The translations under genes and the position numbers were made by a program. DNA of 64,000 nt from Macrostomum lignano (Eukaryota): the NCBI GenBank assembly GCA_002269645.1, contig NIVC01000814.1, forward strand, positions 376,806 to 440,805, written 5' to 3'. Position 1 is the stretch's first letter. Every line of letters begins with the position of its first letter. Below, in pieces: positions 7,253-49,418 of the stretch. Under the pieces are notes generated by a model that was given only the letters and a program-made list of their open reading frames with translations, was not told the DNA's origin and searched no databases.

Positions 7253-7681
7253 TGTATTGAGGCGCGGTTGAAAAACTATGATTTGTTTATCAGCATATTC
7301 AACACCAATTAAATTTGTAAAGTGGAAGCTGATAGGTGCAAACCATATGTTTTCATATACACGTAATATAAAAAAGAATGTTAAATTTCCATGAGCTCTG
7401 TATCTAATTCTAGTTTTATCTTATTTAATCATCAATACACAGCTTCTGAGCACAATTCTAACGAAAGTGTACCATAGACATGGAAGTTCTGCATCATTAA
7501 CGTACTAAAGTCTTTTTATGATCTGTTAGGCCATAAAGTCAATATTTGATTTCGCACACAGCCACAATTCACTCAGTGCAACAGAGAATATTCAGCTTGT
7601 CTCCTTGCTTCCCAAGCAGTACCTAAGTACATGTAGCATCATCGCCATCAATTATGAAATAAAATCATCCGACTACTCTAG

Positions 7682-8032
7682 ACCGCTCTCCTAACTGCTC
7701 TCTCATTGGCTGAGCTAGATTGGGCCTGCCCCTCTGGACTGAGTTTCGTCCTTCTAACTTTGACCTCTCTCCTAACTGCTCTCTCATTGGCTGAGCTAGA
7801 TTGGGCCTGCCCCTCTGGACTGAGTTTCGTCCTTCTAACTTTGACCTCTCTCCTAACTGCTCTCTCATTGGCTGAGCTAGATTGGGCCTGCCCCTCTGGA
7901 CTGAGTTTCGTCCTTCTAACTTTGACCTCTCTCCTAACTGCTCTCTCATTGGCTGAGCTAGATTGGGCCTGCCTGAGTTTCGTCCGTGTAACATCGACCT
8001 GTCTCTTTACTGCTCTCTTATTGGCTGAGCTC
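7682..8032. repeat. 81-bp tandem repeat with CCAAT boxes, about 4 copies
   Basis: Unit contains ATTGGCTGAG and ATTGGGCC; same family as 20870-21190. Confidence 0.9.
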
Positions 8033-8474
8033 AAACCGGCAAAATTTAAAACAGTAAAATCAAAACAGGTTTCTTTATTAATTCCAGTTGGAAGTAAAAT
8101 TCAAACCGCGAGCAATTATTACGGATGTAAATTTGTTTATTTAAATGCGCAATCGTATATAAGATTCAAAAACATTCAGTAGACTACCGAGGAATAACCA
8201 AGAATCGCTAAAGTTACTATTTAATCAGAATCAGAGATACTAAAATAATTACTAGTTATTTTACTATCCGTGGTGTGCACAGACGTTTCTTTCGTAGCAA
8301 CTTTTTCAGGGCTACGTGAGGGATTTTACGATTCAAATCTTTATTCGTCTACTTTTCTCAGTAGTCTAAATTGAATCTCCCACAGTGAGCTAAGATACAT
8401 TCTTTATCTGAGCGTTCAAATAAATCCTGATAAAACAGTAACTTCCAGTAGTCCTTCGTGCTAACATTGAATAG

Positions 8475-9287
8475 TCATCTGAGGAAGGCAACCTCCAAGA
8501 TGCTGACCTCAATATCTTTGGACTCCTTAAGATGATGGTTGTACGATCTGTTCAGATTGTATCGCAGATTAGCAACCTGACTGACGCTATAGTCGCGACC
8601 TTCCACCATAGCGCTAGCAACGTCATCGTTGCTCATCAGCTTCCGAGCGCAGGCCTGCCTCGCGCGATGCATCACAAATGGCATTGTGGTAGTTTTGTGC
8701 AACGAGAACACTAACCCACAAGAAGCGGCAATACCGGCTTCTAAAAAAGCAATATCGATTCCTTTCGATGATGTTGACTGTCCTGCTTTCTTGTTCCTCC
8801 TATTACTATTGCTTTTGTGACTGAGTTTCGCGTCGCTGTAAGTGCCAAACGGTGGATTGGTCACAACCACATCGAACTGTCTTTGATGAACTAGTCCAGC
8901 CGACAGGCGAGTCACATCCGCCTGCAGCAGATCCCAGTTCGCTGATACGTCATTATCATCATCATCGTTGCCAGGTGAAAACAGCTCCATCAAGTTGGAG
9001 CGGCAGAGGTCAAGCGAGTCGCTGTCAATATCGACTCCGCACACGTAACCGGAGCCCAAAGCCAGACAGCCGGTCATGAGGGCGCCGGGACCGCAGCCCA
9101 GATCCAATACGGACTGCTCGGCAGTGAAGCAATTCCAGCGCATCTTGGCATCGTACAGCCAGCTGGCAGCCACCTCGCCAGGCGTGGCGTATTGCTCCCA
9201 ACGCGATTGAGGATTAGCAAATGTTGGCACCTGTTGCAGCAGCGATTCTAACTGTTTCCGATTGCGAACCAGAGGCTGTACAGGGGC
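8475..9287 (-). CDS. METTL5: 18S rRNA N6-adenosine methyltransferase METTL5 (start codon not encoded in frame locally)
   Basis: LESLLQQV...EQYATP N-terminus, SAM motif DLGCGPG, catalytic NPPF, FSLHKTTT. Single exon; an in-frame TAA lies just upstream and the first in-frame ATG falls after conserved residues. Phase-0 acceptors at 9288-9289 (TTCCAG|GCC) and 12 nt further in (TACAG|CCT). Confidence 0.93.
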   Translation of the reverse strand, partial: APVQPLVRNRKQLESLLQQVPTFANPQSRWEQYATPGEVAASWLYDAKMRWNCFTAEQSVLDLGCGPGALMTGCLALGSGYVCGVDIDSDSLDLCRSNLMELFSPGNDDDDNDVSANWDLLQADVTRLSAGLVHQRQFDVVVTNPPFGTYSDAKLSHKSNSNRRNKKAGQSTSSKGIDIAFLEAGIAASCGLVFSLHKTTTMPFVMHRARQACARKLMSNDDVASAMVEGRDYSVSQVANLRYNLNRSYNHHLKESKDIEVSILEVAFLR

Positions 9288-9344
9288 CTGGAAGCGAGCC
9301 GACAAGTTTTAAGATAATCTAGGTTAATTAGAAACATTATTGCT

Positions 9345-9990
9345 GAGACGAGATGCGAGACTGGGGAGTGATTTAGTGAGAGGAGACCTGAGGCTGAGAC
9401 TGATATGAGAGACTTGGCGAGAAGAGATCTGAAACTGAGATGAGAGATTTAGTGAGAGAACATCTGAAACTCAAATGTGAGATTTGGTGAGAAGAGATTT
9501 GAGAATGAGATGTGAGACTTGGCGAGAAGAGATCTGAAACTGAGACGAGAGATTTGGTGAGAGGAGATCTGAGATTTAGATGAGAGGAGATGTGAGAATT
9601 GGTGAGAAGAGATCTGAAACTGACATGAGAGACCTGGCGAGAAGAGATCTGAGATTGAGATGAGAGATTTAGTGAGATGAGATCTGAGACGTGAGACTTG
9701 GCGAGAAGAGATCTGAAACTCAGATGACAGATTTGATGAGAAGAGATCTGAAACTAAGATAAGAGATTTGGTGAGAATAGATAAGAGACTGAGATGAGAG
9801 ATTTGGTGAGAAGAGATCTGAAACTGAGATGTGAGAATTGGTGAGAAGAGATCTGAAACTGAGATGAGAGACTTGGCGAGAAGAGATCTGAGATTGAGAT
9901 GAGATCTGAGACGTGAGACTTGGCGAGAAGAGATCTGAAACTGAGATAAGAGATTTGGTGAGAAGAGATCTGAAAGTGAGAAGATATCTG
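9345..9990. repeat. Degenerate GA-rich minisatellite (about 35 bp, GAGAAGAGATCTGAAACTGAGATGAGAGATTTGGT)
   Basis: Tandem repeats immediately upstream of the METTL5 acceptor. Confidence 0.9.
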
Positions 9991-10609
9991 GCAAGACGAG
10001 TTTTGATTTTCATAGAAATCAAGCTAGTTCTGTTGATTGTTAATTAAAAAATCAAAAAAGACAGTTGATTCTCTTTCGAAATTTTTGTTAAATTGATTTC
10101 AAACAAACATTTCAATAATACAGTAATTAAGTAGTATATTTAGAACATCATACTCGAACACAAGTTTTAGCAGCCACTATTAATAAGAATTTAATTTATT
10201 AATGTACTTTTTATGCGATTTTTCAAGTTAGCAATTTTTCATAAGCAAATCATTATCCTCAAGTAAAGTACAGGAAATGCATTTGCGAAGCACGATTCAT
10301 ATGGACAGGCAAATACGATGTTTAAATACAATAATGATTGCATGTAGAAAATTTACATACTCTTAATCATAGGAGCTTCGCAGATTGTTGAGAGTTCTAG
10401 GAGTTCGTAGAGAGCCACATTTATGGAAGATGACACAGGCACATTTAAGGAAGAAGTAGCTTTTAGATCGTAAGGAGCTACATCTGTAAAATAGAATATG
10501 TGCTGAAAAAATCGTATATCCTTATAAGGGAGTCAAATTTGTGGAAGAGAGTACATTTAAGAGACTGTAGAGAGCCAAATTTTCGGAAGATGACATGTTT
10601 CAAGAAATT

Positions 10610-11400
10610 GTAGGGAGCCACATCTGTAAAAGATTATTTGTGCTAAAAATCGAAGAAAAGCACATCTGTGGAAGAGAATATATTCTAAGAGAGAGCGTAC
10701 AAAGCCACATTTTCGGAAAGAGGACATGTTCTAAGAAATCGTAGGGAGCCACATCTTTAAGACGACACGCGCTAAAAATCGTAGGGAGCCACATCTGTAA
10801 GAGGACACGCGCTAAAAATCGTAGGGAGCCACATCTGTAAGAGGACACGCGCTAAGAAATCGTAGGGAGCCACATCTGTAAGAGGACACGCGCTAAAAAT
10901 CGTAGGGAGCCACATCTGTAAGAGGACACGCGCTAAAAATCGTAGGGAGCCACATCTTTAAGAGGACACGCGCTAAGAAATCGTAGGGAGCCACATCTGT
11001 AAGAGGACACGCGCTAAAAATCGTAGGGAGCCACATCTGTAAGAGGACACGCGCTAAGAAATCGTAGGGAGCCACATCTGTAAGAGGACACGCGCTAAGA
11101 AATCGTAGGGAGCCACATCTGTAAGAGGACACGCGCTAAGAAATCGTAGGGAGCCACATCTGTAAGAGGACACGCGCTAAAAATCGTAGGGAGTCACATC
11201 TGTAAGAGGACACGCGCTAAGAAATCGTAGGGAGCCACATCTGTAAGAGGACACGCGCTAAAAATCGTAGGGAGCCACATCTGTAAGAGGACACGCGCTA
11301 AGAAATCGTAGGGAGCCACATCTGTAAGAGGACACGCGCTAAAAATCGTAGGGAGCCACATCTGTAAGAGGACACGCGCTAAGAAATCGTAGGGAGCCAC
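10610..11400. repeat. 40/41-bp minisatellite (CTAA(G)AAATCGTAGGGAGCCACATCTGTAAGAGGACACGCG)
   Basis: Near-perfect core about 10740-11400, degenerate left flank. Confidence 0.95.
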
Positions 11401-11543
11401 ATTTTGTGAAGAGAGTATGAGTATATTTCTATATGAGTATATAAATATTTAACGCAGAGCAAATAGGGCTTTCAAAGTTTCGAATGCGTGATAAATTCTC
11501 CTTAGATATATTAAATTACAAAGATTAATCCACATTATTACTA

Positions 11544-12017
11544 TTAGTAGCGTCGATAGGACTTGCTAGCGGATCCACTGGAATTGTCTCCGTTATTCCT
11601 ATCGAAATGACGACTGTCTCGTTTAACACCGGCGGCAATATTTCTCGACGGTTCGTTGCGTTGATAATAATCGCCGTCTCGACTGTCGCCTCTGTGGTTG
11701 CCATGGTAACGCTGGCGCTGCTGATGCCGCCGACCCTCGCTAGTCCAGTCGTACTGCCGCCGGGGATTCCGGTACCAGCGGGTCACCACGGGGGGTGTTG
11801 GCGATTTCTCGCGATTCCAACAGGCCTGAAAGTCCGGATCCTGCTCGGTGAACCGGTGCTGGAATTTCATCTCTAATTGGAGGACGCTGAGACCGCCGGA
11901 TGGCGGAGCTGCGGCTGCTGCGGTTGACTGCTCAACAGCTGTCTTAGAAGACTCTGCTGCCTCTGCTGTTGCCTGAGTGGAACTTTTCTCAGCTGCAGCT
12001 TCTTCTGGCATTTTCAT
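11544..12017 (-). CDS. RAMAC: RNMT-activating mini-protein (RAM/FAM103A1) homolog
   Basis: LEMKFQHRFTEQDPDFQ...PPVVTRW core followed by an R/N/Q/Y/G-rich tail as in RAM; ATG at 12017 (second ATG at 12011). Confidence 0.75.
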   Translation of the reverse strand: MKMPEEAAAEKSSTQATAEAAESSKTAVEQSTAAAAAPPSGGLSVLQLEMKFQHRFTEQDPDFQACWNREKSPTPPVVTRWYRNPRRQYDWTSEGRRHQQRQRYHGNHRGDSRDGDYYQRNEPSRNIAAGVKRDSRHFDRNNGDNSSGSASKSYRRY

Positions 12018-12439
12018 CAATAAATGAGTTGATTGCTTTATTAGGCCAGCCAAGTTGGTCTAGCGCTTCAAGTTAAGCAGAGCTGGCCGCGGTTAGTGCG
12101 CAGCTTAACTATCGAAAATTTGACTGCCTAAACTAACGCTTAACCTAAACTCTTATTAAATAAAACAAAACCTATCCTGTATCTAAACTATATCATAAAA
12201 CTAAACTAAACCGAATCTTAAACCCTAATCTAAACCTTTAATCTGGGGGTCGGCCAATTTCGGCCCACGAAGCCTCTCTATCCCGCCCTCGGGTCCTTTG
12301 AAACTTCACAATAGCAATCCGACCCGCTCAAGGTTTGTGTCTCTTCTCAGCTCTCTTCTCTCGTCTCTTTTTTCTTTTCTCCGTTCTCTTCTCCCTGCAC
12401 AGCCTGTGATAGCATGTCAGCGGAATGGGCCACCAATAG

Positions 12440-13570
12440 ACAAGGGCGCCCACCTACGAGACAGGGGCACCCACCTAGGAGACAGGGGCGCCCACCTAGG
12501 AGACAGGGGCACCCACCTAGGAGACAGGGGCGCCCACCTAGGAGACAGGGGCGCCCACCTAGGAGACAGGGGCGCCCACTAAGAGACAGGGGCAACCACC
12601 AAAGAAGACAGGGGCGCCCACCTAGGAGACAGGGGCGCCCACCTAGGAGACAGGGGCGCCCACCTAGGAGACAGGGGCGCCCACCTAGGAGACAGGGGCG
12701 CCCACCTAGGAGACAGGGGCACCCACTTAGGAGACAGGGGCGCCCACTAAGAGACAGGGGCAACCACCAAAGAAGACAGGGGCGCCCACCTAGGAGACAG
12801 GGGCACCCACCTAGGACAGGGGCACCCACTTAGGAGACAGGGGCGCCCACTAAGAGACAGGGGCACCCACCCAGGAGACAGGGGCGCCCACCTAGGAGAC
12901 AGGGGCGCCCACCTAGGAGACAGGGGCACCCACCCAGGAGACAGGAGCGCCCACCCAGGAGACAGGAGCGCCCACCCAGGAGACAGGAGCGCCCACCAAG
13001 GAGACAGGGGCGCCCACTAAGAGACAGGGGCACCCACCAAAGAGACAGGGGCAACCACCAAAGAAGACAGGGGCGCCCACCTAGGAGACAGGGGCACCCA
13101 CCTAGGAGACAGGGGCGCCCACCTATAGGAGACTGGGGCGCCCACCTAGGAGACAGGGGTACCCACCTAGGAGACAGGGGCGCCCACCTATAGGAGACAG
13201 GGGCGCCCACCTAGGAGACAGGGGCACCCACCAAGGAGACAGGGGCACCCACCAAGGAGACAGGGGCGCCCACTAAGAGACAGGGGCACCCACCAAAGAG
13301 ACAGGGGCACCCACCAAGGAGACAGGGGCGCCCACTAAGAGACAGGGGCACCCACCAAGGAGACAGGGGCGCCCACTAAGAGACAGGGGCACCCACCAAA
13401 GAGACAGGGGCGCCCACTAAGAGACAGGGGCACCCACCAAAGAGACAGGGGCGCCCACTAAGAGACAGGGGCGCCCACCAAGAAACAGAGAAGAAACAGA
13501 GGCACCCACCAAAAGATAGGGGCGTCCATTTAAAAGACATGGGCGCCCACCTAGGAGACAGGGGCACCCA
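12440..13570. repeat. 21-bp GC-rich minisatellite (GGAGACAGGGGCGCCCACCTA)
   Basis: Direct tandem repeats with variant units; explains ORFs 12298-13585. Confidence 0.95.
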
Positions 13571-16158: not shown

Positions 16159-16869
16159 GATTGCGTGTCCGATAGAGTTTGCACTGAGCATGAATAAAAT
16201 AAAGAAATTGTTTTTATCGATACTACTTACTATGATCGCTTAAGTCAGTAGTATAAAACTAACTGAAAAAGAAAGAAATTTAGAAAAAAATACAAAAAAA
16301 CAAGAAGCTACGGGTTAATTCTATTCTGTTGAAACTGAACTTTTAATTTTAAACTTGTTTTATATAAAAATAGCAGCATGGTGATTTTTGATAAAATGTT
16401 TACAGGGTGATCTTTTCAGTTTTAGCAGGACAAAAATAGACTGAAAATACGAGTGTACATACACTGACACGATCTATCAGATTATTATATCAAATTAGGC
16501 AAATCTGCAAATAAAATGTTTATAGAGAAAAAAATATTCTTTTTAAAATGTGCTTATTAAAGACAGTGTTCAACTTTGAGTAGGCGATAAAGAAAATGCA
16601 TAATAAAATTGTTTATCCAGACCGTATCATACTGGGCACAATAGGAATTTTGGCAATGCTTCTTACCGCTTATTGGTTGCAAACTATGATCGAATTATAA
16701 AATCAAGTTATGCAGACGAATAACAGGACTGCTGGGATGACTGAACAGAAAATACAAACTAAAAGATAACTTTAATTAGATCAAACAGACCTAAATACTA
16801 GGATTTATTGTAAGAGAAATTTGCAAATCGAAAAAATAAACAGATAAAATTATTAGATTTACAGATTTT

Positions 16870-18977: not shown

Positions 18978-19129
18978 ATTTGCTTTTTAAAGAGTTTTGG
19001 TTGACATGCATTGGTCGGGTGGCGATGGTTTTTAATAATCACTGAATTTAATGTACAGATTTAATTTAGACCAGTTTTATAAAACTTTACAAGCTTGATT
19101 TTGACTATAGATTACCGCTAGATTAGACT

Positions 19130-24208: not shown

Positions 24209-24249
24209 CTGCTTAGCTGTGCGACAGGAAGAGTCCAGAAAAAGAGTTA

Positions 24250-30558: not shown

Positions 30559-31295
30559 ACTAAATCACTCTTGTTTGAATAAAATCATGCAAATTATCAA
30601 TAAAAAAGTATAGATTCATAAAGCATAATTGTAACTACTTTATACTTGACCTATCTAAGTATGAAATTTGATTACATCAAAACTATTATTAAATTCTAAC
30701 AGTAATAAAAGCAAAATAAATTGAAATCAAATAAGTTACACAATCAATCAGAACACAAATACTGGACACTGTCTTTATTTACTTAGCAGATTAATAAGAA
30801 ATCAATATTTTAAAACGAATTATAAAAAAATCTTATTTAACACGACAACTACATGTTGATATCACAAAATGGCACAAATGTCATTGTGCCTTACAGTAGT
30901 ATAATTGGACATGTAAACGACACAACCAGGAAGAAGAGTAGTTAGCTAGTAGTATGAAGAGACATGAAATTCATATGTACATTGCAGTACATTATGAATA
31001 AGAATTTAAGCAGATAATTTAACTAACAAAAACAATTATTCCAAGACTCGAAAATTAGTATAGGAAAGATTTTTAAGACATTCAGATTAAAATGTACCAA
31101 AAACCCTACTATAACCAACAGCGATGACCAAAAGCGAAAAATAACAATGCAGCCTAAGCGTCGCAAATTAAAACTACTCCTATGATTTAAGGCGAAAATT
31201 TCTATTCTTACAGAATTTTGAACCAATTTACCATAAACTATGACCCAACAAGTATCATAGAAAACTTACTATGCCGTTGCTACGGCAATAAAACA

Positions 31296-32000
31296 ACAAA
31301 GCAACTGAAGCTGCGGTTGCTATGGAGATAATGGCAAATAACTGCATAGCAACTAAAGCTGCGGTTGCTATGATGATAATAACGCACAACTGCATAGCAA
31401 CTAAAGCTGCGGTTGCTATGGAGATAATAGCAAATAGCTGCATAGCAACTAAAGTTGCGGTTGCTATGGAGATAATAGCAAATAGCTGCATAGCAACTAA
31501 AGCTGCGGTTGCTATGGAGATAATGGCAAATAACTGCACAGCAACTAAAGCTGCGGTTGCTATGATGATAATAACGCGTAACTGCATAGCAACTAAAGCT
31601 GTGGTTGCTATGATGATAATAACGCGTAACTGCATAGCAACTAAAGCTGTGGTTGCTATGATGATAATAACGCGTAACTGCATAGCAACTAAAGCTGTGG
31701 TTGCTATGATGATAATAACGCACAACTGCATAGCAACTAAAGCTGTGGTTGCTATGATGATAATAGCAAATAGCTGCATAGCAACTAAAGCTGCGGTTGC
31801 TATGGAGATAATAGCAAATAGCTGCATAGCAACTAAAGCTGCGGTTGCTATGGAGATAATGGCAAATAGCTGCATAGCAACTAAAGCTGCGGTTGCTATG
31901 GAGATAATAGCAAATAGCTGCATAGCAACTAAAGCTGCGGTTGCTATGGAGATAATAGCAAATAGCTGCATAGCAACCAAAGCTGCGGTTGCTATGGTTA
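31296..32000. repeat. 48-bp tandem repeat, each unit with a 9-bp hairpin stem
   Basis: CATAGCAAC-TAAAGCTGCG-GTTGCTATG in each of about 14 units. Confidence 0.95.
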
Positions 32001-32094
32001 TAAATTAAATCGCGCATAAAGTCATAGACTGCAAAGCAACTAGTATTCAATTGAGGGCATAGTAACTAACGGTTGCTATGCAAACAGGCCGCAA

Positions 32095-35000: not shown

Positions 35001-38000
35001 CGCAAGAGTAGATACTCGAAGATGGCAAGAGTAGATACTCGAAGATGGCGAGAGTAGATACTCGAAGATGGCAGGAGTAGTTACTCGAAGATGGCAAGTA
35101 GATACTTAAACAATGGCACCCGAGCATGCTAAACATTAATGACAACTTTGAATGTACTTTTTTTACATTTTTAAAAAACCATTCAATGCCTACTATAAGT
35201 AACAAACCTAGCCAGTTTTCGCCCGATACACAATTGCAACATCTGCAATTTCTGGTGCAACAGCGAGGTGCCCAAGTCTGGCGGCGTCTCAACAATGTCC
35301 TCTTGACACTGGCTGTCTTCCGTCTCGGCAGAAGGCGACGCCGTGGCAGCCGCTGGCAACGGACAGGAGTTCTCCCAGCGATAGCGCAATTCCAGCACCA
35401 CCTCTTGCCACAGGTGAGCAACAGCGTGAATACCGCTGGAGTGAGTGTGATTCAGTGTGGCCACGGCCAGGGTCAGACGGTGGGCAAGGGAGCCCAGTGG
35501 GGCGCATTTCAGATCGCGAGCCAACTTCTGAGCTCGCTCGGAGTACTGCTGAGGCTGCTGCTGAGTCGCATCTGAGGGGGGGGGGAAGCACGTTTCATAG
35601 TCTATCACATACCGGATGCTTTAGTGAACACTGGCTACCACATCCCGGATGCCTTAGTGGACATCGGCTACCACATCCCTGATGCTTTAGTGGTCATTGG
35701 CTACCACATCCCTGATGCTTTAGTGGTCATTGGCTACCACATCCCTGATGCTTTAGTGAACACTGGTTACCACATCCCAGATGCCTTAGTGAAAATCGGC
35801 TACCACATCCCAGATGCCTTGTGGTCATTGGCTACCACATCACGGATGCTTTAGTGGACATTGGCTACCACATCCCTGATGCTTTAGTAGTCATTGGCTA
35901 CCACATCCCTGATGCTTTAGTAGTCATTGGCTACCACATCCCTGATGCTTTAGTGAACACTGGTTACCACATCCCAGATGCCTTAGTGAAAATCGGCTAC
36001 CACATCCCAGATGCCTTGTGGTCATTGGCTACCACATCCCTGATGCTTTAGTGAACACTGGTTACCACATCCCAGATGCCTTAGTGAAAATCGGCTACCA
36101 CATCCCGGATGCCTTGTGGTCATTGGCTACCACATCACGGATGCTTTAGTGGACATTGGCTACCACATCCCTGATGCTTTAGTAGTCATTGGCTACCACA
36201 TCCCTGATGCTTTAGTAGTCATTGGCTACCACATCCCTGATGCTTTAGTGGACACTGGCTACCACATCCCTGATGTTCTAGTTGACATTGGCTACCAGCT
36301 TGAATGTTGCAAATCTCGCACATAACGTTCTCCATCATAAACTCCAAAACAAACCTACTCGACACTCCTGCCGCATCGGGGAACAAAAAGTGCAGCAAGC
36401 TGTTCAGCTGGGCTTCGCTCAACGGAGCCGATTGGTCGCTTCGGACAGACAGCTTGGAAGTGGCCCGGCGAACCACACCGGTGGCAGCGTCGGTCATGCT
36501 GGGCACTCGGCTGCCAGTCAGACGGTCCAGAGCTCTGCAGAGTGGAAGTTTTGTATGGCAATTTTTAATGGTACATTTGTATCTTGTATACAGAGATTTA
36601 TAATATGGAAATAGGGTAGCAAGATGTGGTCAAGCAACTAGGGATAGAGCTGAGAGGCTGGCACAGCAACTGAGAACGGAAATAACAGGTTTGCCCAGCA
36701 AATGAGGATGGAGCTGAGAAACTGATCGAGCAACTGAGGGTGGATCTGAGAGGCTGGTTCAGCAAATGAGGATGGAGCTGACAGGCTGGTTTAGCAACTG
36801 AGAACGGAAATAACAGGTTTGCCCAGCAACTGAGGATGGAGCTGAGAAACTGATCGAGCAACTGAGGGTGGATCTGAGAGGCTGGTTCAGCAAATGAGGA
36901 TGGAGCTGACAGGCTGGTTCAGCAACTGAGAACGGAAATAACAGGTTTGCCCAGCAACTGAGGATGGAGCTGAGAAACTGATCGAGCAACTGAGGGTAGA
37001 TCTGAGAGGCTGGTTCAGCAAATGAGGATGGAGCTGAGAGACTGATCGAGCAACTGAGGATGGAGCTGAGAGACTGATCGAGCAACTGAGGATGGAGCTG
37101 AGAGACTTATCGAGCAACTGAAGATGGAGCTGAGAGGCTGATCGATCAACTGAAGATGGAGCTGAGAGACTGATCGAGCAACTGAGGATGGAGCTGAGAG
37201 ACTGATCGAGCAACTGAGGATGGAGCTGAGAGACTGATCGAGCAACTGAGGATGGAGCTGAGAGACTGATCGAGCAACTGAGGATGGAGCTGAGAGACTG
37301 ATCGAGCAACTGAGGATGGAGCTGAGAGACTGATCGAGCAACTGAGGATGGAGCTGAGAGACTGATCGAGCAACTGAGGATGGAGCTGAGAGACTGATCG
37401 AGCAACTGAGGATAGAGCTGAGAGACTGATCGAGCAACTGAGGATGGAGCTGAGAGACTGATCGAGCAACTGAGGATGGAGCTGAGAGACTGATCGAGCA
37501 ACTGAGAATGGAGCTGAGAGACTGATCGAGCAACTGAGCATGGAGCTGTGGAGGCTGGCCCAGCAACTGAGCATGGAGCTGTGGAGGCTGGCCCAGCAAC
37601 TGAGCATGGAGCTGTGAAGGCTGGCCCAGCAACTGAGCATGGAGCTGTGGAGGCTGGCCCAGCAACTGAGCATGGAGTTGTGGAGGCTGGCCCAGCAACT
37701 GAGGATGGAGCTGGGAGGCTGGCCTAGTAACTGAGGATGTAGCAGGGAGACTGGTCCAGCAACTGAGGATCTGAAAGGATGATTGCCCATAATCCAAGAC
37801 CATCGCGCAGAACTATCAAGACAACACAAACCATCGCGCAGAACTATCAAGACAACACAAACCATCGCGCAGAACTATCAAGACAACACAAACCATCGCG
37901 CAGAACTATCAAGACAATCACAAACCTACCTAGAAGCAGTAGCCGACTCCAACGCGGCTCCATCGCTGCTTTTGCCGCCGCCGCCGCCGCCGTCGGCAGC

Positions 38001-48029: not shown

Positions 48030-49418
48030 TCATTCATCGGTTGGTAGACTTGTCTTCTCAACGTAGTCACCATGAGACATGATGCACTTCTCCCATCGGT
48101 CTCGCATCTTGTCGATGGCGTTTGCATACACATTTCTTGGGATCTGGTACAGCAAGATCCTCCTGACCTCACTCTCCAAGTGATCACAACTGTTGTGAAC
48201 TCGCCCTTGAAGCTGTCGCTTTAACTCAGGAAACAAGGCGAAGTCCGCAGGTGCCAGGTCAGGAGAATATGGAGGGTGAGGAAGCAACTCAAAGTTCAGT
48301 TGGTCAATTGCTTGCATGGTCTTTGCAGCAGTATGCGGCCTCGCATTGTCGTGGTGGAGGATATGGGGTCTTTCTTTCCCCCATCTTTTGTTGCAGATGC
48401 ATACATGCGCAACAGTCGGCCGAGTCGGCCGATCCGGCCGACCGATTTGGCGGCCAATCAAGGAAGTCGCAAAAATGCCCACCCAAAAAATAACCTGAAG
48501 AGTAGTACTAAGTAGCTGATGAGGCATTTTAGCTTAATAAAACAGTCATAGTTACTCCTGCCGTTTACCCAAAGTTGCGTTAATTTTGCTTTCGGGTTTT
48601 TTTATATGTAAGTCGCATTTTTGGCCAAAAACTACGTCGCATTTTTGTTAAAACTAAGTCGCACGGCTGACCGAATTTTGGAGGTTGCACATGTATGTGC
48701 AGATGTCTGACTTCAGTTTTGTCAGGGAGGTCACATACCAATCAGCATTGATGGTCGAGTTTGGCTCCAGGAACTCGATGGTCAGTGGGCCATTGCAATC
48801 AAAAAAGAGAGTCAGCATGACTTTGTTGCTGTGCCGGTCTCGGCGAGCTTTTGTTGGTGGATCAGATCCCCTGACGGTCCAAACCATTGACTCCTGCTTT
48901 GTTGGAGGGTCGAAGTATGGCACCCATGTCTCGTCGCCAGTTACGATCAGCTCTCGAAAGGCTTCCCATCCTCCATGTTGATTGACCAGCTCCAGGTTGT
49001 TCACACATTTCTGCTGGCGATCCAGCTTCATGACCTCAGTGAGCAATCGTGGTACCCAACGGGCACTCAGCTTGACGTGATTCATCTTCTGCAGGCACTC
49101 GTGAACTGTGGACTTCGGGCAATCCAATCGATCGGCCATTTCGCGAATGCTCTGGCGGCAGTCTTCATCAATCAAGTCGAGAATGCGATCCGTCAGGCTG
49201 CTGCTGTCGCGAATTGCAGGGCATCCGGACCTTGGCATGTTGCTCACGTCAGTTCTTCTAGCCTGAAACTCGCCCACCCACCTGCTTACTGTCATCTTGC
49301 TGACAGCATGGTCACCATGAGCTATGCAAAGTTGCCTGTGGATGTCAGCCGATTTGGTTCCGGAGCTCCAAAGTGTAAAGATGGCATGTCGCTGCCCAGT
49401 CTTTGAATGCACATCCAT
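48030..49418 (-). pseudogene. Mariner transposase, interrupted by one MITE insertion
   Basis: HTH, WVPR, TGDETW, HHDNARPH and YSPDLAPAD with 34 residues between D2 and D3. Removing 48400-48697 plus one TSD restores SDIC-NKRW in frame (about 360 aa). Confidence 0.95.
48400..48697. mobile_element. 298-bp MITE with 14-bp TIRs and perfect 8-bp TSD
   Basis: CATACATGCGCAAC...GTTGCACATGTATG, flanked by TGCAGATG at 48392-48399 and 48698-48705; internal AGTCGCA repeats. Confidence 0.92.

What the first reader, a model, noticed from the sequence alone, without database searches (positions are those of the whole stretch)
9270..9340. METTL5 has no in-frame ATG: start codon possibly donated by a spliced leader
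Seen: the conserved N-terminus (PLVRNRKQLESLLQQV) is preceded in frame by TAA; the nearby ATG (about 9338) is out of frame. Two phase-0 acceptors (TTCCAG|GCC at 9288, TACAG|CCT) sit directly before the conserved region. Established: flatworm spliced leaders end in AUG, and in schistosomes that AUG can serve as initiator. Inference: SL-AUG splicing gives M-APVQPLVR... or M-PLVRNRKQLES..., so translation of this gene would depend on trans-splicing.
Basis: partly seen in the sequence, partly recalled or inferred. Interest (0 to 1): 0.75.

Follow-up and report, generated by a model that had tools for sequence, protein, structure and literature searches.

The report
Spliced leader supplies METTL5 start codon
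In the flatworm Macrostomum lignano, this copy of the rRNA methyltransferase gene METTL5 has no start codon of its own and almost certainly gets its AUG from the trans-spliced leader, a mechanism known in flatworms since 2006, so this is a good new example rather than a new principle.

Summary
The window is Macrostomum lignano (assembly Mlig_3_7). METTL5 is one exon on the minus strand (8475-9287). An in-frame TAA (9311-9309) closes the frame upstream. The only nearby ATG (9337-9335) is out of frame. The first in-frame ATG would delete about 50 conserved residues.

TTCCAG|GCC (exon starts at 9287) fits the published M. lignano SL-acceptor motif [T/C]TNCAG. The GenBank CDS is 5'-partial and starts exactly there in all three genomic copies. 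METTL5 is gene 2 of a transcriptional unit whose gene 1 is RAM. The SL ends in ...TTGCATG.

In two paralogous copies the assembly reads TGCATG|GCC instead of TTCCAG|GCC, which is the SL's last six bases. The same copy-specific change occurs at three other SL junctions nearby. One lies in a 5'UTR. Another has only a partial change (CTG|). Mlig_3_7 was polished with RNA-seq, so these are most likely SL-read artefacts, and they record the SL-GCC junction.

Verdict: interpretation supported, confidence about 0.8. It is a new member of a known kind (Cheng et al. 2006). No reads, RACE or proteomics were available here. Side finding: the assembly carries SL-derived bases at trans-splice sites.

The parts
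8475..9287 (-). METTL5 coding exon as encoded in the genome: 270 codons (APVQPLVR...EVAFLR) plus the stop at 8477-8475. It has no ATG of its own at the 5' end.
   Evidence: Identical to the 270-aa 5'-partial NCBI protein P0121. Pfam methyltransferase hits. Best solved relative is human METTL5, 6h2u, E=1.4e-26. DLGCGPG and NPPFGT lie in columns invariant across 12 orthologues.
9288..9293 (-). SL trans-splice acceptor TTCCAG. The exon starts at 9287, in phase 0 with the ORF.
   Evidence: Fits the motif [T/C]TNCAG reported at M. lignano SL acceptor sites (PMC8629364). The annotated CDS boundary falls here in three copies. Paralogues read TGCATG here.
9276..9280 (-). Second in-phase acceptor candidate, TACAG|CCT (exon would start at 9275), which would give M-PLVRNRKQLES...
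   Evidence: No annotation or paralogue footprint supports its use. It is unchanged in all copies.
9309..9311 (-). In-frame stop codon TAA that closes the METTL5 frame upstream of the acceptor.
9248..9337 (-). Out-of-frame ATG (9337-9335) that opens a 29-codon ORF in the unspliced RNA. Trans-splicing at 9288|9287 removes the ATG, because it lies in the outron.
9288..11543 (-). Outron, or intercistronic spacer, between RAM and METTL5 (2256 nt). It holds two tandem arrays: 9394-9981 (35-nt unit) and 10718-11402 (40/81-nt unit).
   Evidence: The proximal part is conserved in the paralogues.
11544..12011 (-). Upstream same-strand gene RAM (RNMT-activating mini protein, 155 aa). It is gene 1 of the same transcriptional unit in the paralogous loci.
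   Evidence: PF15320, 36.2 bits against a cutoff of 25. Names BOX15_Mlig015112g1 and Mlig024045g1 beside METTL5 ...g2.

Best explanation
METTL5 in this copy is the downstream gene of a RAM-METTL5 transcriptional unit of Macrostomum lignano. Its mRNA is made by trans-splicing the 35-nt spliced leader (...CAATTTATTGCATG) onto the acceptor TTCCAG|GCC, so the exon starts at window position 9287 on the minus strand. The last three bases of the leader are AUG. They are the first AUG of the mature mRNA, 32 nt from the cap, and they are in phase with the exon. Translation therefore gives M-APVQPLVRNRKQLES..., 271 aa. The precursor cannot be translated into METTL5. Its frame is closed by TAA six codons upstream of the exon, and its only nearby AUG is out of frame. 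Shown here: the sequence anatomy, the species, the annotated boundary, the motif fit, and the SL-derived bases at this junction in paralogous copies. Inferred: that the SL is joined here in vivo, and that ribosomes start at the SL AUG.
For: (1) Anatomy. (2) Species and family: 99% identity to M. lignano PAA90118.1, and 36-42% identity to the aligned METTL5 orthologues from other organisms. Human METTL5 is the best solved relative. Its residue 6 aligns with residue 11 of the SL-initiated protein, so the predicted N-terminus has normal length. (3) The SL sequence ends in ATG (PMC5173321; PMC8629364; PMC10468722 describes the final ATG as a likely start codon). (4) The SL-acceptor motif [T/C]TNCAG equals TTCCAG. 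(5) All three annotated copies are 5'-partial and start at GCC. The names g1 (RAM) and g2 (METTL5) mark one transcriptional unit, and such units were cut at experimentally mapped SL sites. (6) Paralogues L004 and L005 read GCTGCATG|GCC where the window reads GCTTCCAG|GCC. That is three substitutions in five bases, giving the SL's last six bases. The same copy-specific TTCCAG/TGCATG swap lies 27 nt upstream of the ATG of a 116-aa gene, where it is non-coding (window 19010-19005). At the DHHC CDS start the copies read TTTTCTG| or TTGCATG|. At a Snf7 site they read ATTCATG|, TTGCATG| or TTTCATG| after a poly-T tract. About eight places in about 30 kb of multi-copy alignment have at least 3 substitutions in 5 nt with clean flanks. 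Three of them carry a TGCATG allele, all on the gene-sense strand. Mlig_3_7 was polished with Pilon using RNA-seq reads. (7) In the spliced mRNA the SL AUG is first. The next AUG (nt 172) is out of frame. (8) The copies differ by 7 synonymous and 3 non-synonymous changes, so the gene is under constraint. (9) Precedent: Cheng et al. 2006, as reported in PMC9851317 and PMC12582326. In Schistosoma mansoni the SL AUG is in frame in 28% of trans-spliced transcripts, and more than 40 cDNAs need it.
Against: No read, EST, RACE product or peptide could be inspected. The SL junction rests on the public annotation and on SL-like bases in paralogous copies. M-prefixed versions of the protein are not in the 15-billion-protein collection. 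SL reads cannot tell the three copies apart, because the first coding difference is at codon 93. Why the window copy escaped overwriting is therefore only conjecture (a higher ratio of DNA to RNA reads). The RAM-METTL5 spacer is 2.26 kb. That is long for an operon, although about 1.3 kb of it is tandem repeat, and the published operon criterion subtracts repeats. RAM is not among the called genes on the window's own contig.
Confidence: 0.8

Rival explanations
1. The SL is joined mainly at the second in-phase acceptor TACAG|CCT (exon start 9275), giving M-PLVRNRKQLES.... The start codon is still donated by the SL, but the N-terminus is four residues shorter.
For: It is in phase, with an open frame of 267 codons and 14 of 20 upstream bases pyrimidine. 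The resulting N-terminus aligns within one residue of several orthologues' Met.
Against: The annotated CDS starts at 9287 in all three copies. The SL-like overwrite in the paralogues sits at the first acceptor, and the second is unchanged everywhere. GTACAG does not fit [T/C]TNCAG.
Confidence: 0.08
2. The gene has an ordinary genomic ATG. The TGCATG|GCC of the two paralogues is real, and the window copy is a variant or assembly error that lost it. Alternatively the paralogues use a genomic ATG and only the window copy depends on the SL.
For: Two of three copies read ATG in frame immediately before GCC. SL reads should map equally to all three copies, so unequal polishing needs an extra assumption.
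Against: The same TTCCAG/TGCATG swap occurs at a non-coding junction, where an ATG only makes a 6-codon upstream ORF. The DHHC junction shows a half-converted CTG| that is neither an acceptor nor an ATG in three copies. The Snf7 site shows mosaic SL-ward variants. RNA-seq polishing is documented. The 5'-partial annotation starts after the ATG even in those copies. Three substitutions that by chance create a consensus acceptor are very unlikely.
Confidence: 0.05
3. An unannotated upstream exon is cis-spliced to the same acceptor and supplies the ATG.
For: Flatworm acceptors are often shared between cis- and trans-splicing (PMC12582326). There are 2.26 kb of transcribed spacer upstream.
Against: The transcript-based gene model is a single interval of exactly 813 nt in three copies. 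The spacer is mostly tandem repeat. The gene is cut off as g2 of its unit.
Confidence: 0.04
4. Translation starts without the SL AUG, either at a near-cognate codon (TTG at 9305-9303, or the CTG in PLV) or at the internal Met of AKMRWN. Alternatively this copy is an untranslated pseudogene.
For: A TTG lies in frame after the stop. In-frame internal ATGs exist at mRNA nt 180 and 246.
Against: The TTG lies in the outron and is removed by splicing at 9288|9287. An internal start would delete eight invariant N-terminal columns and is preceded by an out-of-frame AUG. The 7:3 ratio of synonymous to non-synonymous changes and the intact 270-codon frame argue against a pseudogene.
Confidence: 0.03

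Closest known systems
Flatworm mRNAs that use the SL 3'-terminal AUG as initiator (Schistosoma mansoni; Cheng, Cohen, Ndegwa & Davis 2006, J Biol Chem 281:733, as cited in PMC9851317 and PMC12582326)
   Same: The SL ends in AUG. The acceptor is in phase with a conserved ORF that has no AUG of its own. The SL AUG becomes the first AUG of the mRNA.
   Different: A different flatworm order (Macrostomorpha, free-living), a different SL sequence and a different gene (METTL5). Translation from the SL AUG was tested experimentally in that work and is only inferred here.
slORFs, reading frames created by SL addition (slORFfinder, PMC9851317)
   Same: The ORF exists only after the SL is joined, and the start codon lies in the leader.
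   Different: slORFfinder rests on SL-read junctions and ribosome footprints, and neither was available here. This is the canonical protein's frame, not an alternative one.
SL-resolved operons of M. lignano (Wudarski 2017, PMC5730564; Ustyantsev & Berezikov 2021, PMC8629364)
   Same: Same-strand upstream gene, shared transcriptional-unit id (g1, g2), and a [T/C]TNCAG acceptor at the 5' end of the downstream gene.
   Different: The spacer is 2.26 kb (about 1 kb without tandem repeats), against a typical distance of about 100 bp and a 1000-bp repeat-corrected threshold. Those papers do not discuss start-codon donation for individual genes.
Human METTL5-TRMT112, the 18S rRNA m6A1832 methyltransferase (PDB 6h2u, 6h2v)
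   Same: Best solved relative. The N-terminal helix, the SAM-binding motif and the NPPF motif all align.
   Different: The M. lignano protein has two lineage-specific insertions: about 22 aa after NPPFGT and about 19 aa before the C-terminal strands. Its start codon is not encoded with the gene.

Membership tests
SL-AUG-initiated flatworm mRNA (Cheng 2006 class) | The organism's spliced leader ends in AUG | tested here: met
   The species was identified as M. lignano. The published SL is ...CAATTTATTGCATG. There is no SL RNA gene in the window itself, so the SL sequence comes from the literature.
SL-AUG-initiated flatworm mRNA (Cheng 2006 class) | An AG acceptor in phase 0 immediately upstream of the conserved ORF | tested here: met
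   TTCCAG|GCC, exon start 9287, with a 271-codon frame from the SL ATG. Fits [T/C]TNCAG.
SL-AUG-initiated flatworm mRNA (Cheng 2006 class) | No genomic in-frame AUG between the upstream stop and the conserved N-terminus | tested here: met
   TAA at 9311-9309. The first in-frame ATG is about 50 codons into the conserved region.
SL-AUG-initiated flatworm mRNA (Cheng 2006 class) | Transcripts that carry the SL joined at that acceptor | tested here: inconclusive
   Indirect only. The 5'-partial CDS boundary is at 9287 in three copies, and the gene is named g2. SL-derived TGCATG replaces the acceptor in two paralogous copies of an assembly polished with RNA-seq. No reads could be inspected.
SL-AUG-initiated flatworm mRNA (Cheng 2006 class) | Translation actually starts at the SL AUG | not testable with these tools
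   Needs N-terminal proteomics, initiation-site ribosome profiling or a reporter. The support here is only that it is the first AUG and the next one is out of frame.
METTL5 (rRNA N6-adenosine methyltransferase) | Class I SAM-binding motif (D/E-L-G-x-G-x-G) and the NPPF catalytic motif | tested here: met
   DLGCGPG and NPPFGT lie in columns invariant across 12 orthologues.
METTL5 (rRNA N6-adenosine methyltransferase) | Closest relatives are METTL5 orthologues rather than other methyltransferase families | tested here: met
   The best named hits are all METTL5. The best PDB hit is human METTL5, E=1.4e-26, across three aligned segments.
METTL5 (rRNA N6-adenosine methyltransferase) | m6A methylation of 18S rRNA together with TRMT112 | not testable with these tools
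   Biochemical property.
SL-resolved operon (polycistronic transcriptional unit) | Adjacent same-strand genes in one transcript, with the downstream gene SL trans-spliced | tested here: inconclusive
   RAM (11544-12011) lies on the same strand upstream. The paralogous loci share unit ids, g1 and g2. The spacer is 2256 nt, about 1.3 kb of it tandem repeat. RAM is not called on the window's own contig. No precursor reads were seen.

The most novel reading that the evidence does not exclude
The TGCATG alleles are real genomic sequence, not polishing artefacts. On this reading the 3' end of the spliced leader has repeatedly been copied into the genome at trans-splice junctions, for example by repair templated on SL-spliced mRNA. 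Paralogous copies of one gene would then switch between an SL-donated and a genome-encoded start codon (METTL5: TTCCAG in one copy, TGCATG in two).
Probability: 0.04. Interest if true: 0.8.

Novelty: new member of a known kind. Interest (0 to 1): 0.3.

Why it matters
Biology: production of a conserved ribosome-modifying enzyme in this flatworm depends on trans-splicing, because the unspliced polycistronic precursor cannot yield the protein. This extends the start-codon donation described in schistosomes to a free-living, early-branching flatworm that can be made transgenic, so the mechanism could be tested directly there.

Annotation: many M. lignano proteins labelled 'partial' may be complete once the leader's Met is added. 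In this 30-kb stretch, 16 of 28 annotated CDS starts across four contigs are 5'-partial.

Technical: the reference assembly Mlig_3_7 appears to carry SL-derived bases in place of the last 1-5 outron bases at trans-splice sites, differently in different copies. That creates false ATGs, erases real AG acceptors and inflates apparent divergence between paralogues. It may be part of the reason that only 9551 of 21754 SL sites showed the acceptor motif.

Tried and rejected
- SL RNA gene in the window: no full SL with up to 6 errors and no Rfam family. The SL sequence had to come from papers.
- Enrichment of TGCATG in the window as a whole: none, 36 found against 53 expected. TTGCATG occurs 14 times, which is not decisive.
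- Exact look-up of M-prefixed METTL5 proteins (three variants): not in the collection. No independent transcript-derived protein was found.
- Look-up of the SPP-like ORF from its internal ATG: not on record.
- A 5-mer control using at least 2 substitutions was swamped by tandem repeats and was uninformative. It was replaced by the stricter test of at least 3 substitutions with clean flanks.
- A global three-way alignment without filtering was too noisy because of a structural difference in one copy.
- Considered and rejected: an internal Met start, a TTG start, a pseudogene, a retrogene carrying an SL remnant (upstream sequence is conserved far beyond the junction), and an upstream cis exon.
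- The bacterial promoter and terminator scan was not used, because it does not apply to a eukaryote.

Full report
**What is there**

The window is from Macrostomum lignano. The ORF at 8475-9305 (minus strand) is 99% identical to GenBank PAA90118.1, 'hypothetical protein BOX15_Mlig015112g2, partial'. An identical 270-aa protein is annotated on a 440,805-bp contig of assembly GCA_002269645.1 (Mlig_3_7) that contains the window. The protein is METTL5:
- It hits class I methyltransferase Pfam families.
- All of its best named relatives are METTL5, at 36-42% identity.
- The best solved relative is human METTL5, 6h2u, E=1.4e-26.
- The DLGCGPG and NPPFGT motifs lie in columns invariant across 12 orthologues.

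**Check of the observation**

On the minus strand the sequence reads ...CTT TAA AAC TTG TCG GCT CGC TTC CAG|GCC CCT GTA CAG|CCT CTG GTT CGC AAT CGG AAA CAG....
- The in-frame TAA is at 9311-9309. No ATG lies between it and the conserved block.
- The ATG at 9337-9335 is in another frame. It opens a 29-codon ORF ending at 9250-9248.
- The first in-frame ATG (AKMRWN) would remove eight invariant alignment columns.
- Of 14 AG dinucleotides between 9460 and 9200, only two lie after the stop, before the conserved block and in phase: CAG|GCC (exon start 9287) and CAG|CCT (exon start 9275).

**Evidence that the spliced leader is joined at 9288|9287**

1. The published M. lignano SL is CGGTCTCTTACTGCGAAGACTCAATTTATTGCATG (PMC5173321; PMC8629364). 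PMC10468722 notes that the final ATG is probably a start codon.
2. The top motif at M. lignano SL acceptor sites is [T/C]TNCAG, placed right at the junction. The window has TTCCAG.
3. The Mlig_3_7 gene models were built by cutting transcriptional units at experimentally mapped SL sites and poly(A) sites (PMC5730564). In all three genomic copies the CDS is 5'-partial and starts at the G of GCC.
4. METTL5 is named ...g2 and the upstream same-strand gene ...g1 in both paralogous loci (Mlig015112, Mlig024045). That upstream gene is RAM, the RNMT-activating mini protein (PF15320). It is intact in the window at 11544-12011.

**An unexpected twist that serves as evidence**

The window was aligned with the two paralogous loci. 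About 500 nt around the junction are near-identical, except that the paralogues read GCTGCATG|GCC where the window reads GCTTCCAG|GCC. That is three substitutions within five bases. The result is exactly the last six bases of the SL, including an in-frame ATG. Two readings are possible: a real genomic start codon in those copies, or SL-containing RNA reads written into the assembly.

[quoted passage not shown] I then compared up to four copies of the neighbouring genes.
- *116-aa gene.* Its first exon base is at window 19004, 27 nt upstream of the ATG. Three copies, including the window, read AATGCATG|TCAACC and one reads AATTCCAG|TCAACC. This is the same swap at a non-coding position, where an ATG would only create a 6-codon upstream ORF.
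- *DHHC gene.* At the 5'-partial CDS start (window 24235), three copies read CTTTTTCTG|GAC and one reads CTTTGCATG|GAC. CTG is neither an acceptor nor a start codon. It is what a CAG acceptor becomes if only position -2 is overwritten by the SL base.
- *Snf7.* At a site 33 nt upstream of its ATG (window 16188), a poly-T tract is followed by ATTCATG|, TTGCATG| or TTTCATG| in the three copies. Both variable positions have an allele matching the SL.

In about 30 kb of multi-copy alignment, only about eight places have at least 3 substitutions in 5 nt with clean flanks. Three of them carry the TGCATG allele, all on the gene-sense strand. GCATG and TGCAT (with their reverse complements) are the top-ranked 5-mers in that test.

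This graded, copy-specific drift towards the SL, always just upstream of a junction, is what forced end-to-end alignment of SL-bearing reads followed by majority polishing would produce. It is hard to explain biologically. I therefore read the paralogues' ATG as an artefact. If so, it records that RNA reads with ...TGCATG joined to GCCCCTGTACAG exist. Only a copy with an AG can make such reads, and the window copy is the one whose AG survived in the assembly.

**Mechanism**

In the mature mRNA (SL plus exon) the SL AUG at nt 33 is the only AUG in the leader and the first in the message. The following base is G. The next AUG (nt 172) is out of frame with a 25-codon ORF. In-frame AUGs follow only at nt 180 and 246. 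Scanning from the cap therefore gives M-APVQPLVRNRKQLES..., 271 aa. Human METTL5 residue 6 aligns with residue 11 of that protein, and orthologue start codons fall within five residues of this position.

The precursor cannot make the protein. Its frame is closed by TAA, and the out-of-frame ATG at 9337 lies in the outron. The copies differ by 7 synonymous and 3 non-synonymous changes, so the gene is under constraint.

What is inferred rather than shown: the junction in vivo, and initiation at the SL AUG.

**Rivals**
- The second acceptor (9275) would also use the SL AUG. It has no support from the annotation or from the overwrite pattern.
- A real genomic ATG in the paralogues cannot be excluded without DNA reads, but the non-coding and half-converted cases argue against it.
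- An upstream cis exon is not in any of the three single-interval gene models, and the spacer is mostly two tandem arrays.
- Non-AUG or internal initiation would either lie in the outron or delete conserved residues.

A weak point for the artefact reading is that SL reads cannot distinguish the three copies, because the first difference is at codon 93. The sparing of the window copy therefore needs a different ratio of DNA to RNA coverage, which I could not check.

**Comparison with what is known**

All reported flatworm SLs end in AUG, and its use as an initiator was shown in 2006. [quoted passage not shown] My literature searches found no paper that describes this for individual M. lignano genes. 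This is therefore a new member of a known kind, in a free-living flatworm where reporters can test it. It is not a new mechanism.

**Limits**

The tools gave no access to reads, to other Macrostomum genomes or to an RNA-free assembly. Exact look-ups of M-prefixed proteins found nothing.

Noticed in passing
window 19005-19010 (-), 24236-24242 (-), 16189-16195 (-); paralogue loci L004, L005, L007, L008, L009: The assembly carries bases of the spliced leader's 3' end (TGCATG, TTGCATG, or only the T at position -2) in place of the last outron bases at trans-splice junctions, differently in different copies. This is most likely a result of polishing Mlig_3_7 with RNA-seq. It erases AG acceptors and creates false ATGs.
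   Followed up: yes
window 16155 (Snf7/CHMP CDS start, -) and 17911 (178-aa gene CDS start, -): Both annotated 5'-partial CDSs start immediately after a genomic ATG (AATCATG|CCT giving M-PLFGK, and GCAATG|TAC). Across four contigs, 6 of 16 5'-partial CDS starts follow ATG, 2 follow CAG and 2 follow CTG. These may be further SL-AUG starts whose acceptor was overwritten, or real ATGs that the annotation cut off.
   Followed up: partly
window 30580-30586 (-): TTGCATG follows a T-rich tract 27 nt upstream of the ATG of a TRAPP-subunit gene (PF04051; two introns, 178 aa). It may be another overwritten SL junction.
   Followed up: partly
window 9394-9981 and 10718-11402: Two tandem arrays fill the RAM-METTL5 spacer. 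One has a 35-nt unit, about 16 copies at 75% identity. On the sense strand it is pyrimidine-rich and repeats acceptor-like TCTCAG and TTTCAG motifs. The other has a 40/81-nt unit, about 17 copies at 96-97% identity. The first array is conserved in the paralogous loci.
   Followed up: partly
window about 4900-38000, minus strand: A run of at least ten same-strand genes: Rab3GAP catalytic subunit, TRAPP subunit, signal-peptide-peptidase-like, DHHC palmitoyltransferase, a 116-aa gene, a 178-aa gene, Snf7/CHMP, RAM, METTL5 and a 508-aa gene. Several have SL junction signs, which suggests operon-like organisation. RAM (cap-methylation cofactor) and METTL5 (rRNA methyltransferase) share a transcriptional unit.
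   Followed up: partly
L004 7276-7503, compared with window 11544-12011 and L005 7397-7864: RAM is truncated to 75 aa (...SPTPPW*) in one paralogous copy but is 155 aa in the window and in the other copy. This is a frameshift or an assembly indel. RAM is not among the called genes on the window's own contig although its ORF is intact there.
   Followed up: no
window 8475-9287 (-), protein residues about 156-177 and 215-233: M. lignano METTL5 has two insertions absent from 11 orthologues: about 22 aa (YSDAKLSHKSNSNRRNKKAGQSTSS) directly after the NPPFGT motif, and about 19 aa (CARKLMSNDDVASAMVEGRDY) before the C-terminal strands.
   Followed up: no
window 48030-49418 (-): A degenerate mariner/Mos1-type transposase split into two ORFs (HTH_48 and Transposase_1, then DDE_3).
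   Followed up: partly
window 12298-12833, both strands; also 7665-8182, 31255-32050 and 36887-37865: Long ORFs made of short tandem repeats, such as the GRPPRRQ repeats. They coincide with the GC-rich, strongly AT-skewed segment at 12-14 kb. They are probably satellite DNA rather than genes.
   Followed up: no
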